This document shows, piece by piece, positions 3,081-16,368 of a DNA stretch of 64,000 nucleotides; the first letter of the stretch is position 1; each line of letters begins with the position of its first letter. Source of the stretch: Trichoplax adhaerens (taxonomy: Eukaryota > Animalia > Placozoa); the NCBI RefSeq assembly GCF_000150275.1, contig NW_002060979.1, forward strand, positions 32,612 through 96,611. Direction: 5' to 3'. The notes beneath the pieces were generated by a model. The model saw nothing but the letters and a program-made list of their open reading frames with translations, ran no database searches and was not told the DNA's origin. A program made the position numbers and the translations under genes.

Positions 3081-3144
3081 CTATTTTCCTATGACCGTGC
3101 GAACTGCTCGGAAACCAATGCGGGCGTATCGTCGCCAATGATGT

Positions 3145-3179
<35 letters not shown>

Positions 3180-3631
3180 TCTCCACCACTTGATTATATA
3201 AAAAGTAACAATACGCAATCAATTAAATTTATTTACTATCCTAAATTGGTTCTTGTAATTTATTAACACATATTAACGCATAGATTTAACATACGCTCGA
3301 TGAATTATGCTATAAAGGTAATTGCATATTATTACATGATGAAGTTTGCACTCATCAATAACGACAACTGAAAATAGTAAAGTTGAAATAGATTTTTATT
3401 ATTAACCGCAGTACTAACCGCTTTTTTCATTTCTTGTAAATTCTCTTCAAAATCTTCTTGCTTTAATTCTTCGTCGGCCATTCTGGCAATTTCCTTATCC
3501 TCTTTGTTTTTGTTTTCAAAGTTGTTATTCATCATCTCTTGCAATTCCTTCTCAGTAATTTCTTCTTCAGCAGTACAGTATGTAGTAGCCACAAGCAGCA
3601 AAGCTGCGATTAAAATTAACTTCATATTCAT
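3081..3631 (-). CDS. Secreted cationic (antimicrobial-like) peptide precursor 1, 106 aa; coding exons 3631-3419 and 3188-3081
   Basis: Signal-like MNMKLILIAALLLVATTYCTA, then a 50-aa acidic propiece ending EMKKA. Donor GCG|GTTAGT at 3418 and acceptor AATCAAG|TGG at 3189 (phase 0). Last exon WWRRRRRRRRRRRRRHHWRRYARIGFRAVRTVIGK-stop. Confidence 0.9.
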
Positions 3632-11799: not shown

Positions 11800-12465
11800 C
11801 ATTTATCGTGAATCATTTCGATATTTATGCATAGTACTACATAAGCGCATTTCTACGAATCGTATAGGTTTACAAAGTATCTTATGTAATCGATACTATA
11901 TCTGTTACGGCCAAAACCCGAAGTCCGTATCTATTTGGAAAGATACTATAAAGATCTTAGTTAAACGCATGCTACTAAAAAGTAATTTAAGTGATATCAT
12001 GAAGACCAGGAATCATCGTTAGTCATTAACTTGACTAAACTTAATTGTGAATATTTTCCAGTATTTATATACAGTACTATATAAGTGCATTTCCAGAAAT
12101 CTTATCGATTCATGAAGTAGCTTATAGAATCGATACTATGTCTATTTGGAAAGACACGAAAAAGGCCTTATTAAGTACATACAACTAAGAGTAATTTAAG
12201 CGAATCCATAAAGACTAGGAACCATCATTAGTAATTTAGCTTGAATAAACTTTATTTATGAATAATTCCAGTATTTATATAGAGTACTGTATAAGCACAT
12301 TCTTAGGAATCGTATCAATTTGTAAAGTAACTTTATAGAATCGGCACCATATCTATTTGGAAAGATATCACAAAGAGCTTATCTAAGCTCATATGGCTAA
12401 AGAGTAATTCGATATTATAAAGACTAGGAACTATCATTAGTAATTAGCTTGGCTGAACTTGTTGG
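11800..12465 (+). repeat. Degenerate tandem repeat, three units of ~210-240 bp
   Basis: Recurring tctatttggaaaga, aagac.aggaa..atc.ttagt and agtact..ataag blocks. Confidence 0.85.
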
Positions 12466-12877
12466 TATAACAATTATTCCTTGGAAAAATTGATTGGAGA
12501 ACTATCAAAAACTGATTCGAACATTCAAGGCCATGAATTCATCGTATATAAAACGTTTATTTTGTGACCAAAAAAGAAGACTAGGATCAGATACAGGCAA
12601 TATCAGGTACATAACGTAAATAACATATTATTACTGAAAAATTTTAATTTGATATTGCAATTATACACTACTTCGTCTAGCCATGAACTAGCAGTAATAC
12701 TTTACGGATCATTCAGTTTTAAACTACTGTTAACAAGATGCGATAAAATAGCATTTAAATATTCTACATTCTTAGCTTAGCAAAATATAGACAGTATACG
12801 ATGCTTATCTGTCTTGGTTACTCTCTAATTTTAGGAAAATGGACTTTATAAACTAGTTTAATCCTGTAGTGAATATT

Positions 12878-13810
12878 TTATCGTTTTTTGCCATAGACAA
12901 AAATCTGTCGACGACGATAAAAATGGAAGATGATGGGACGTCGAGGTTTCGGAGCAGGGGCTGGAGCACGACGACGGCGGCGGCGGCGACGGCCCCACAA
13001 GGCCTGCTATGGTAAATTTCAAGTTGAAAAGAGTTTTAGTATTTAGATAGATATATTTAATTAAAAAATATAAAATTTTATGGAATATTTGCATTAAAAG
13101 ATTACTCATTTTCACAATTAACAGCGCAAAGTTAACTTGTGAGAAGGAGCTGATTTTAGGATAAGATTGCTTGTAGAAATGTGTTAGTAAATGACTTTGA
13201 ATCCTCAATTATCATTATAGATTATCCTAACTATGAAATGTAAAATACTACCGAATTATGCCGTAACTATGATAAGCTTACTGATAATTATAGACAGTAG
13301 CCTCTATATGTATTATTATTATAAATTGCAAGGTATCTTATGATGAAATTGCTTTAGTAATGCACGATAAATTTACTTTGAATCATATAGTATCATAGTA
13401 GATCATACTACCTATGTAATATAGAATGTCACCGAATAATGCCTTAATTATGATAGATATACTGATAATGATAGATAGCAGTCTCGTCTGCATGGTAGTA
13501 TTATTAAAAGCTACGATGTATAATTATCCTAAATACTCACGGTGCTTTTCTCGGTTAGACCATTCTCAAATTCTGAATCGAATCCTTTATCCATGTCATA
13601 AGACTCATCTATTTCTCCAAGTTCGTTGTATGCATCTTTGTCGGCAATTTCGTACGGGTCTAGTTTATGGACATCCTTTTCAGCAATATCGTAATAGCCT
13701 GGTCCATGCCCACCCTTATTGTCATTATCGAGCTAAGAATTGTCATCTTCAGTGGCGTAAGCAAATGCAAAGAGAAATAGACACGCAATGAGAGCCAATT
13801 TAGTATTCAT
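12878..13810 (-). CDS. Secreted cationic peptide precursor 2, 131 codons; exons 13810-13541 and 13003-12878; in-frame TAG at codon 26 (recent pseudogene, null allele, sequence error or readthrough)
   Basis: MNTKLALIACLFLFAFAYATEDDNS*LDNDNKGGHGPGYYDIAEKDVHKLDPYEIADKDAYNELGEIDESYDMDKGFDSEFENGLTEKST. Donor ACC|GTGAGT at 13540 and acceptor TAGCAG|GCC (phase 0). Last exon ALWGRRRRRRRRAPAPAPKPRRPIIFHFYRRRQIFVYGKKR-stop. Putative 5'-UTR intron (donor GAG|GTACGT at 14004) and AATAAA at 12561-12556. Confidence 0.8.
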
Positions 13811-14589
13811 TTTCTTGCAATGATCCTTCTGTATAGTCAATGAAATAAAGATTAATTTTTAGTACTGGATAGACTGTAGTATTCGAATTGAAATTGAAAT
13901 GATGAATATACGGCATCTTCGAATATAGTATAGATTGAATGATTAATACATATTATTACGACTATAACCTTGATTTTTAAAAAACGCTTAATGTTAATAC
14001 GTACCTCAACAACTTTTAATTTTCTAAATTAATTCTTGAGATAAATTCTGCGATCCTTCCTGAATTTCCAAAGTAAAGCAATCTCGTCTGCATGGTAGTA
14101 TTATTATAAGCTACGATGTATAATTATAATTAACCATATAGCAGTAAGACAACGATAACTGGATACAATCAATGTGACGTCGTCATTGTTGAACGTAGGT
14201 TGTGCTAATCATAAAATTCAATGCCTATAGATACTCAACCAATATGGACATTTACGCATGAAAAGATACAAAGACAATATCAAATACTTCGATAATTTCG
14301 ACGAAACACAATTCTTCAACCATGAAAATCTATGGTCGGACAAGCAGTTAATCCTATATGAACTTCTATCTAGTTTGAATATTTATAGCCCCCAAACACT
14401 ACAGCTACAAATCACTCTACCATTCCCTTACTTCGATATATGGGACATGCAATGGAATCTTCAACACTCTCAACTCATCATCAGAGGTAAATGGGATTAC
14501 TGCTTAGTAACCCCAGTGAAAAAGACATGATATTTGCATGAAATGTGAAGCTAATCTTGTATCTTGTACCCAGTGCAATTTAACGAGAG

Positions 14590-15500: not shown

Positions 15501-15980
15501 ATAAAATAGTCAATGTATTTGGTACAACATTTCTGCTAGCAAAGGCGATCATGACTGGAAGGGATATTGCCAACAGAAAATCGTCGTACCTTGTTGTCCA
15601 TGTTGTCTTCCACTTTTTCCCGACCCCAAAGGTGAGATTGCCTGCTTTCATTCTGTTTCTCACCTTGCTATCCACAGTTTACGAGGTAAAATAGCGATTT
15701 CAGTTAGAGCCAAGAAAGGTTGATGGCGAACATGCAGTAAGCAGCGTGCCTGTGGGATACTTTCTCAGTCCAATTCAGGTTACTCGTTTGATATCTTGCT
15801 TATAATATTGTCCGCTGTAGACTCAATCCCTACTTCTATAGGGTGACAAGCTATTTTGCACAGTAGCTTGCAGCGCCGACTCTCTACTTGGTCTTCCTCT
15901 ACTTCTACTGCCATCTACACGTGAAATGGCAATCAACCATCAAACATCTTTTTTTCTCACATTCTTTTTCCATACTACAG

Positions 15981-16368
15981 ATTTCTCTCTTATACTTATT
16001 AATCTGTGCTTTTGACCGATATTGTTGGGTGTTAGCATTGTCATCGTGCTTAGCAGGTAAGTCTTTCAACCAGTTAAAGCAATCTTAATTAATCGATATC
16101 ATTTTAAACGCAAACCCTAACATTATTGCAATAATATAATCGTCCCTTTATCGCCATTAGACCTATGGTTGACATTTTGGGTTGTGAACTGAATTTCTCT
16201 TATACTTGTCAATCTGTGTCTTTTAATAGATATTGCTGGGTGTTAGCATTCTCATCTAGTTTAATGAATAGGTAAGTCCTTCAACAAGTGACAATAGCCT
16301 TAATTAATCGCTATCATTTTAAGCGTCGAATGGGTTGGTAACCCTGACATTATTCCAATAATCGTCCC
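15981..16368 (+). repeat. Diverged tandem duplication (~15981-16146 and ~16193-16368)
   Basis: Shared ctcttatactt..aatctgtg, gggtgttagcatt, aggtaagtc, ttaattaatcg.tatcatttt and aatcgtccc. Confidence 0.8.

What the first reader, a model, noticed from the sequence alone, without database searches (positions are those of the whole stretch)
12878..13003. Unrecognised effector peptide: ALWG-R8-APAPAPKPRRP-IIFHFY-RRR-QIFVY-GKKR
Seen: 41 aa with 14 Arg, 3 Lys, no acidic residue and no Cys. It is modular: octa-Arg, a Pro/Ala linker, then two aromatic/beta-branched segments around RRR. After the Arg run it is unlike the paralogue, which looks like an amphipathic helix. Known: Pro/Arg-rich AMPs (Bac7, PR-39, apidaecin) act inside bacteria, and thanatin contains KKPVPIIYCNRR. 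Inference: a cell-penetrating Pro/Arg arm fused to a disulfide-free beta-hairpin. I do not recognise this sequence.
Basis: partly seen in the sequence, partly recalled or inferred. Interest (0 to 1): 0.85.

Follow-up and report, generated by a model that had tools for sequence, protein, structure and literature searches.

The report
Known Trichoplax AMP4-type peptide gene copy
The poly-arginine peptide is real, but it is the tail of an already catalogued Trichoplax secreted-peptide gene, a copy of the published putative antimicrobial peptide "AMP4", and this particular copy carries a premature stop codon.

Summary
Window 13003-12881 (minus strand) encodes the 41-residue peptide exactly as described.

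It is not an unrecognised sequence:
- It is the last coding exon of a three-exon Trichoplax adhaerens gene: 5'UTR exon, then signal peptide plus acidic propiece, then a phase-0 intron, then a Trp-polyArg tail ending in GKKR.
- The exact peptide is already in GenBank/UniProt as TRIADDRAFT_62241.
- At least seven further copies about 98% identical lie in the same assembly. They encode QAFW-R9 (one R8) instead of QALWG-R8.
- One of those copies, TRIADDRAFT_64402, is "AMP4" of Mayorova et al. 2025 (PMC12013895), an arminin-like putative antimicrobial peptide mapped by FISH to ventral gland cells near the rim.
- The neighbouring paralogue's tail is trichoplaxin-2 (PMC7436000), which is antimicrobial as a synthetic peptide.

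The window copy looks unproductive. Its TAG at codon 26 is unique among nine sequences compared. RNA contigs show splicing and abundant transcripts, but only of the QAFW type. The Trichoplax sp. H2 orthologue is intact.

Structure prediction gave no beta-hairpin, at low confidence. No relative was found outside Trichoplax.

A wider Trp-polyArg gene family of at least nine distinct genes exists in this genome.

The scan's earlier notes on this peptide all lie on this same window.

Verdict: real, ordinary and already known, with function still untested.

The parts
14006..14082 (-). 3' part of the 5'UTR exon. Similarity to the other gene copies stops at 14082. In those copies the transcripts run further upstream into sequence that this locus lacks.
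   Evidence: RNA-contig joint 13828->14005 (CT..AC on +, which is GT..AG on -). Loose ends at 14082. The upstream motif is present in L016, L017, L023 and L030 but not in the window.
13829..14005 (-). Intron 1 (177 nt), in the 5'UTR
   Evidence: Joints in contigs of X1 and X8
13541..13828 (-). Exon with the start codon at 13810. It holds a 19-residue signal peptide (13810-13754) and then a 71-residue acidic propiece (net charge -15 in the intact copies).
   Evidence: Sequence, translation, family comparison. 100% identical over 64 aa to five other copies.
13733..13735 (-). In-frame TAG at codon 26. It is AAG (Lys) in all seven paralogous copies, in the H2 orthologue and in all four sequencing runs.
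   Evidence: (13735 A>T in 100% of depth)
13007..13540 (-). Intron 2 (534 nt), GT..AG, phase 0, directly before Gln-Ala-Leu-Trp
   Evidence: Joint 13006->13541 in X1, X8 and the RNA library X13
12878..13006 (-). Modules are Trp-Gly-R8, APAPAPKPRRP, IIFHFY, RRR, QIFVY and GKKR (an amidation/dibasic signal).
   Evidence: Identical to residues 119-160 of P0004.
12550..12877 (-). 3'UTR, at least about 330 nt. Some contigs run further.
   Evidence: Contig coverage (tables 2 and 8)
3419..3631 (-). Paralogue (gene 1), exon with signal peptide and acidic propiece (net -10)
3081..3188 (-). Paralogue (gene 1) tail exon: WW-R13 followed by the published trichoplaxin-2 20-mer and a stop
   Evidence: The sequence is identical to T2 in PMC7436000.

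Best explanation
The stretch is the last coding exon of one locus of the Trichoplax adhaerens 'AMP4' gene group. This locus is annotated TRIADDRAFT_62241 and is orthologous to TrispH2_007441. The gene encodes a small secreted prepropeptide: a 19-residue signal peptide, an acidic propiece (net about -15), then, after a phase-0 intron, a Trp-polyArg tail (net +17/+18) ending in Gly-Lys-Lys-Arg. Most likely mechanism (inferred): the precursor enters the secretory pathway of ventral rim gland cells, where the acidic propiece offsets the tail's charge during storage. Endoproteolysis then frees the tail. Carboxypeptidase trimming of KKR and amidation using the Gly give a ...FVY-amide end. The Arg/aromatic-rich peptide is released onto the substrate and binds and disrupts anionic microbial or prey membranes. 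Whether the poly-Arg run stays on the mature peptide or is consumed as a processing site is open. In the sequenced strain this particular copy carries a TAG at codon 26 and lacks the upstream transcript start of the expressed copies. It therefore probably contributes little or no peptide. The near-identical QAFW-R9 copies are the ones seen in RNA.
For: Shown here:
- Exon/intron structure, and splicing in a bona fide RNA library and two further runs, with exon contigs of very high k-mer depth.
- At least eight copies at 97-98% identity in the assembly.
- A 99.7% orthologue over 7.7 kb in Trichoplax sp. H2 with an intact frame.
- Identity with public protein records.
- The JGI model of the window copy dodges the TAG.
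- The family-wide architecture of similar signal peptide, acidic propiece (-10 to -24), phase-0 intron, invariant Trp plus at least 6 Arg, and G-K(K) ends in 7 of 9 members.
From papers:
- Ta 64402, the C1382 copy, is AMP4. It is arminin-like, and FISH places it in ventral cells 15-30 um from the rim, at the position of type 1 gland cells. It is co-expressed with an intelectin (PMC12013895).
- The paralogue's synthetic tail, trichoplaxin-2, has MIC values of 0.25-2 uM (PMC7436000).
Against: - No activity, processing or peptidomic data exist for this peptide. The AMP label in the literature rests on architecture alone.
- The metacells expressing AMP4 were classed as 'peptidergic' or 'epithelial unknown', which also fits a signalling role.
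- The RR, RRR and R8 runs are potential convertase sites that could cut the tail into short pieces.
- The charge match between propiece and tail across nine family members is only a trend (Spearman -0.57, p 0.11).
- Structure prediction is uninformative.
- The TAG could be an assembly error or one allele.
Confidence: 0.6

Rival explanations
1. The gene is a multi-product neuropeptide-like precursor. Convertases cut at R8, RR, RRR and KKR, carboxypeptidase trims the basic residues, and the products are short peptides such as APAPAPKP, PIIFHFY and pGlu-IFVY-amide that signal between cells.
For: GKKR is a canonical amidation plus dibasic signal. Gln after RRR would cyclise to pGlu. AMP4-expressing metacells were classed as 'peptidergic' in single-cell data (PMC12013895). 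The cells sit in the same rim zone as other peptidergic cells.
Against: In family members L027 and L028 the same logic would give tripeptides and a lone Phe-amide. The paralogue's tail has no internal site and is active as a whole peptide. There is no orthologue outside Trichoplax (PMC12013895). The Gly before the Arg run, which would give a Trp-amide, is Arg in the expressed copies.
Confidence: 0.15
2. The window locus is fully functional. On this reading the TAG is a consensus error or one allele of the 2008 assembly, and the animal makes the ALWG-R8 peptide from this locus, as Trichoplax sp. H2 presumably does with ALWG-R10.
For: The H2 orthologue is intact and 99.7% identical over 7.7 kb, including the upstream flank. 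Apart from the TAG the frame, splice sites and tail are intact.
Against: 13735 A is unique among nine sequences compared. No RNA contig in three runs carries the ALWG alleles at 12994 or 12998, or A at 13735, although contigs do drop rare variants. The transcripts' 5' ends continue into sequence that this locus lacks. Between the window and H2, real substitutions (4 in 1.6 kb) are commoner than expected consensus errors.
Confidence: 0.3
3. The tail is not a killing peptide but a physical agent. Its Arg/aromatic blocks would condense or glue polyanions such as granule matrix, mucus or biofilm polymers through charge and cation-pi contacts, for granule packing or adhesion at the rim.
For: Very high expression. 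The family shows blocky RRR/aromatic-triplet repeats. The cells carry large dense granules at the adhesive rim (PMC12013895).
Against: There is no direct evidence. The paralogue's tail is a potent membrane-active peptide. Co-expression with an intelectin points to defence.
Confidence: 0.08

Closest known systems
Trichoplax AMP4 (Ta 64402 / TRIADDRAFT_64402; Mayorova et al. 2025, PMC12013895)
   Same: Same gene group: about 98% identical 1.6-kb unit, the same exons and the same tail from APAPAP to GKKR. Both fall in the same 90% protein cluster.
   Different: The window copy reads Leu-Trp-Gly-R8 instead of Phe-Trp-R9. It has a TAG at codon 26 and a different sequence upstream of 14082. None of its alleles were seen in RNA contigs.
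Trichoplaxin-2 precursor (EST GR418172.1; Juretic et al. 2020, PMC7436000)
   Same: It is the neighbouring paralogue, 9.7 kb away in the window. It shares a similar signal peptide, an acidic propiece, a phase-0 intron, a Trp-polyArg start of the tail and a G-K end.
   Different: After the Arg run, trichoplaxin-2 is a predicted amphipathic helix with measured antimicrobial activity. This tail is instead Pro/Ala-rich, followed by two aromatic/beta-branched blocks, and is untested.
Hydra arminins
   Same: Same architecture: signal peptide, strongly acidic N-terminal part, cationic C-terminal part and a C-terminal Gly for amidation. This is the comparison drawn in PMC12013895.
   Different: No sequence similarity was detected to anything outside Trichoplax. 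Arminins have no poly-Arg run (from my own knowledge, not tested here).
Proline/arginine-rich antimicrobial peptides (Bac7, PR-39, apidaecin) and thanatin
   Same: A short KP-RRP-II-aromatic stretch and a high Arg content.
   Different: Pro is only 5 of 41 residues and there are no repeated PRP units. There is no Cys for thanatin's disulfide. No solved chain of these peptides matches, and no hairpin is predicted.

Membership tests
Trichoplax AMP4 gene group (TRIADDRAFT_64402/64427/62560/62241, TrispH2_007441) | Near-identity of protein and gene unit | tested here: met
   Same 90% cluster. 97-98% DNA identity over 1.4-1.7 kb. The tail is 100% identical to P0004 residues 119-160.
Trichoplax AMP4 gene group (TRIADDRAFT_64402/64427/62560/62241, TrispH2_007441) | Open reading frame from signal peptide to tail | tested here: not met
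   TAG at 13735-13733 (codon 26) in the window only
Trichoplax AMP4 gene group (TRIADDRAFT_64402/64427/62560/62241, TrispH2_007441) | Transcribed and spliced | tested here: inconclusive
   Splicing and abundant contigs were seen, but all carry the alleles of the QAFW copies. None carries the window's alleles at 12994, 12998 or 13735. Contigs can hide rare variants.
Trp-polyArg prepropeptide family of Trichoplax (includes trichoplaxin-2) | Similar signal peptide, acidic propiece, phase-0 intron, and a tail exon starting with Trp plus at least 6 Arg | tested here: met
   Nine distinct members were compared. Trp and six Arg are invariant. The signal peptides align.
Arminin-like antimicrobial peptide precursors (architecture class) | Signal peptide, acidic N-terminal part, cationic C-terminal part, C-terminal Gly | tested here: met
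   The same judgement is made for Ta 64402 in PMC12013895.
Arminin-like antimicrobial peptide precursors (architecture class) | Sequence homology to Hydra arminins | tested here: not met
   phmmer of P0002 against 1.84 billion representatives found only the Trichoplax cluster and one 27-residue low-complexity match. No Pfam family passed its cut-off.
Arminin-like antimicrobial peptide precursors (architecture class) | Antimicrobial activity of the released C-terminal peptide | not testable with these tools
   Only the paralogue's tail has been assayed (PMC7436000).
Proline-rich antimicrobial peptides (Bac7/PR-39/apidaecin type) | High Pro content with repeated Pro-Arg-Pro type units | tested here: not met
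   5 Pro in 41 residues (12%) and a single KPRRP
Proline-rich antimicrobial peptides (Bac7/PR-39/apidaecin type) | SbmA-dependent uptake and ribosome or DnaK targeting | not testable with these tools
   Needs bench assays
Thanatin-like beta-hairpin peptides | Beta-hairpin closed by a disulfide | tested here: not met
   No Cys. No strands in either AlphaFold2 model, though both are low-confidence. No match to solved chains.
Amidated neuropeptide precursors | Basic cleavage sites flanking short peptides, and Gly before a basic site for amidation | tested here: inconclusive
   The sites are present (RR, RRR, GKKR). The family pattern argues against full cleavage. There are no peptidomic data.

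The most novel reading that the evidence does not exclude
The Trp-polyArg genes may form one placozoan-specific class that has not been described as a family. It would comprise at least nine distinct genes plus the multi-copy AMP4 group, and would link trichoplaxin-2, AMP4 and several mis-modelled 'hypothetical proteins'. In this reading the poly-Arg run is kept on the mature peptide, and the charge-matched acidic propiece acts as a removable mask, a natural counterpart of engineered activatable cell-penetrating peptides. The animal would use these peptides to enter or lyse microbes and prey.
Probability: 0.2. Interest if true: 0.6.

Novelty: already known. Interest (0 to 1): 0.25.

Why it matters
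Placozoans digest prey outside the body and defend a bare epithelium. Which secreted molecules do the killing is still an open question (PMC12013895 says so for lipophil granules). This gene group is among the abundant secreted-peptide transcripts and has already been flagged as a putative antimicrobial peptide, so this window adds no new entity.

- The group has many copies.
- The window's copy is interrupted in this strain but intact in Trichoplax sp. H2.
- The Gly before the Arg run is not conserved.
- The gene belongs with trichoplaxin-2 in a larger Trp-polyArg family whose members are partly mis-annotated.

The function of the peptide and the fate of the Arg run remain untested.

Tried and rejected
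- Pfam scan of P0001, P0002 and the paralogue's exons: nothing above cut-off.
- phmmer of P0002 against 1.84 billion representatives: only its own cluster, plus P0006 over 27 residues.
- P0006 follow-up: no relatives, no match in the Trichoplax genome, and its run id appears in no paper. Left unexplained.
- Solved-structure sequence search with the tail: only chance-level hits, and no antimicrobial peptide.
- AlphaFold2 on the precursor and on the tail alone: pLDDT about 60, no strands. Uninformative rather than negative.
- Full-text search for strings of this tail (IIFHFY, FHFYRRR, APAPAPKPRRP, YRRRQIFVY and others): no relevant paper. The one QIFVY hit is an unrelated tick vaccine paper. The supplement of PMC12013895 held as text has none of the strings.
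- The 'WFR8' peptide in PMC9495127 looked similar but comes from a Symbiodinium protein.
- Charge compensation between propiece and tail across nine members: a trend only.
- 'Trp-amide from Trp-Gly-Arg': rejected, because the Gly is Arg in all expressed copies.
- Whether AMP1-3 of PMC12013895 carry the Trp-polyArg module could not be settled. The exon-1 search from L027 returned other models.
Full-length analyses used the database proteins P0001 and P0002. The piece after the TAG was searched on its own.
- The poly-Arg survey used CGN codons only, so members encoded with AGR codons would be missed.

Full report
**Observation**

It has 14 Arg, 3 Lys, 5 Pro and no acidic residue or Cys. All Arg codons are CGN. 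The exon is 57% G+C inside a 32% G+C region. A (CGN)6 pattern is found at only two loci in the window, against none in 100 shuffles.

**Gene structure**

- Upstream on the same strand lies an exon with ATG at 13810. It encodes a 19-residue signal peptide and an acidic propiece, and ends at a GTGAGT donor at 13540.
- The acceptor at 13007 puts Gln in phase 0 in front of the peptide.
- Contigs from four public runs were laid on 12500-14100. They show the 13006->13541 joint, including in a declared RNA-Seq library (X13).
- A second joint, 13828->14005, defines a 5'UTR exon.
- Exon contigs have k-mer depths of about 10^5, against 10^2-10^3 in the retained intron. This is a rough sign of abundant transcripts.
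- The gene therefore has three exons, and the finding is its last coding exon.

**The organism and prior records**

- The window's genome has 105.6 Mb in 1414 contigs.
- An exon-1 query from an intact copy returned TrispH2_007441.
- Its 90% cluster holds TRIADDRAFT_64427, 64402, 62560 and 62241.
- TRIADDRAFT_62241 (P0004) maps onto the window. Its last exon is 100% identical to 13006-12881, and its model avoids the TAG by using the AG of that TAG as an acceptor behind two upstream exons at about 16044 and 15667.
- The exact peptide has therefore been a public record since the 2008 genome.
- Ta 64402 is called AMP4 in Mayorova et al. 2025 (PMC12013895). The paper describes it as an arminin-like secretory peptide with an amidation signal.
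- FISH places it in ventral cells 15-30 um from the rim, at the position of type 1 gland cells. It is co-expressed with Ta 63786 and the intelectin Ta 64393. No orthologue was found in Hoilungia H13 or Cladtertia H23.
- The paralogue at 3081-3631 of the window encodes WW-R13 followed by exactly the 20-mer published as trichoplaxin-2. That synthetic amide has MIC values of 0.25-2 uM (PMC7436000).

**Copies**

- A genome-wide pattern search and a search with the propiece found at least seven further copies of the 1.4-1.7 kb unit at 97-98% identity. They lie on C1150, C1238, C1272, C1291, C1375, C1382 and C1411.
- Many copies sit next to assembly gaps.
- They encode QAFW-R9. One has R8, and one has an Ile-to-Thr change.
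- The window is the only QALWG copy in this assembly.
- Its true orthologue is the Trichoplax sp. H2 locus L031, 99.7% identical over 7.7 kb including both flanks. That locus has QALWG-R10 and Lys at codon 26.
- A at 13735, which makes the TAG, is unique to the window among nine sequences compared.
- In all four runs, 100% of the depth reads T at 13735, G at 12994 and A at 12998. These are the alleles of the QAFW copies.
- The contigs also continue beyond 14082 into a motif that is present upstream of four QAFW copies but absent from the window.
- I conclude that the transcripts seen come from the QAFW copies. The window copy is probably unproductive in this strain.
- Contigs hide rare variants, and I could not lay raw reads a second time, so this conclusion is likely rather than proven.

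**Family**

- The other poly-Arg loci share the same architecture: a similar signal peptide, a propiece of net -10 to -24, a phase-0 intron of 130-534 nt, and a tail exon starting with an invariant Trp and at least six Arg.
- Seven of nine members end in G-K(K), with or without a few more residues.
- Tails after the Arg run differ widely. Types include a helix-like tail (trichoplaxin-2), RRR-spaced aromatic triplets (L025, L027, L028), Cys-bearing tails (L026) and Pro-containing tails (this gene, L029).
- Propiece and tail charges correlate only weakly (rho -0.57, p 0.11).

- No Pfam family passes its cut-off.
- There is no relative outside Trichoplax among 1.84 billion representatives, apart from a 27-residue match to an orphan transcript.
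- No solved antimicrobial peptide matches.
- AlphaFold2 gives no strands for the precursor or for the isolated tail, at pLDDT about 60.
- The beta-hairpin and Pro/Arg-peptide kinship are therefore unsupported, though not excluded.
- The Gly before the Arg run is Arg in the expressed copies, so it is not a conserved amidation site.

**Mechanism**

I commit to a secreted host-defence or prey-lysis peptide made from a charge-balanced precursor and amidated at Tyr after removal of KKR.

- Shown: the gene structure, splicing and abundance (here), the cell type (literature), and the activity of the paralogue's tail (literature).
- Inferred: the processing, the amidation and the antimicrobial action of this peptide.
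- Main rival: cleavage at the basic runs into short signalling peptides.

The piece behind the TAG was searched alone, and full-length work used the database proteins.

**Verdict**

The feature is real, is already catalogued and has been named a putative antimicrobial peptide. The window's copy is an interrupted paralogue. Novelty is low, and the open questions are experimental.

Noticed in passing
L020/L021, L024, L025, L026, L027, L028, L029 (G000 contigs C1331, C1364, C1404, C1410, C1411): At least seven further distinct genes share the same layout: signal peptide, acidic propiece, phase-0 intron and a Trp-polyArg tail. Several tails are RRR-spaced aromatic triplets (FFY, FVY, YWY). I found no paper that treats them as one family.
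   Followed up: partly
L026:1892-2720 (G000:C1410 about 626.1-626.9 kb): This looks like one gene with two Trp-polyArg modules separated by an acidic spacer and an intron. Both modules carry Cys pairs (..HCRCYGKK and ..GCYCYTVYHGKK), so disulfide-closed hairpins are possible here, unlike in the finding.
   Followed up: no
L032 (Logan contig of SRR3436857; protein P0006): An orphan 503-residue secreted-looking protein from an unidentified transcriptome has two '...ELSET-x-W-R8-P6-8-K' modules that resemble 'TEKSTQAFW-R9-APAPAPKP'. It has no relatives and no match in the Trichoplax genome. Homology or convergence is undecided.
   Followed up: partly
L030 (G000:C1411:8150300-8155100); window-equivalent 13061-13750: The C1411 copy (R8 variant) has a 690-bp deletion that removes most of the signal/propiece exon and the intron. 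The same junction, with the same 10 inserted letters, appears in RNA contigs of X1 and X8. A broken copy is therefore transcribed.
   Followed up: partly
window 15587-16044 and 13733: The public model TRIADDRAFT_62241 is a chimera. It takes two upstream exons and uses the AG of the TAG as an acceptor, so it loses the signal peptide. TRIADDRAFT_63910 and TrispH2_011546 likewise miss the Trp-polyArg exon of their loci.
   Followed up: partly
window 11928-12451: There is a 210-bp tandem repeat (2.5 copies, 78% matches) just downstream of the gene's 3'UTR.
   Followed up: no
window 12500-14082, run X16: In the DNA-like run X16 the single contig over the gene unit has k-mer depth 379, against 60 for a neighbouring contig. 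This fits about six collapsed copies. It is rough, and the tool warns against reading depth as copy number.
   Followed up: no
window 12986-12993: The length of the Arg run varies between copies and strains: R8 in the window, R9 in most copies, R8 in L030 and R10 in the H2 orthologue. This is expected for a CGN triplet repeat, and it shows the exact length is not fixed.
   Followed up: yes
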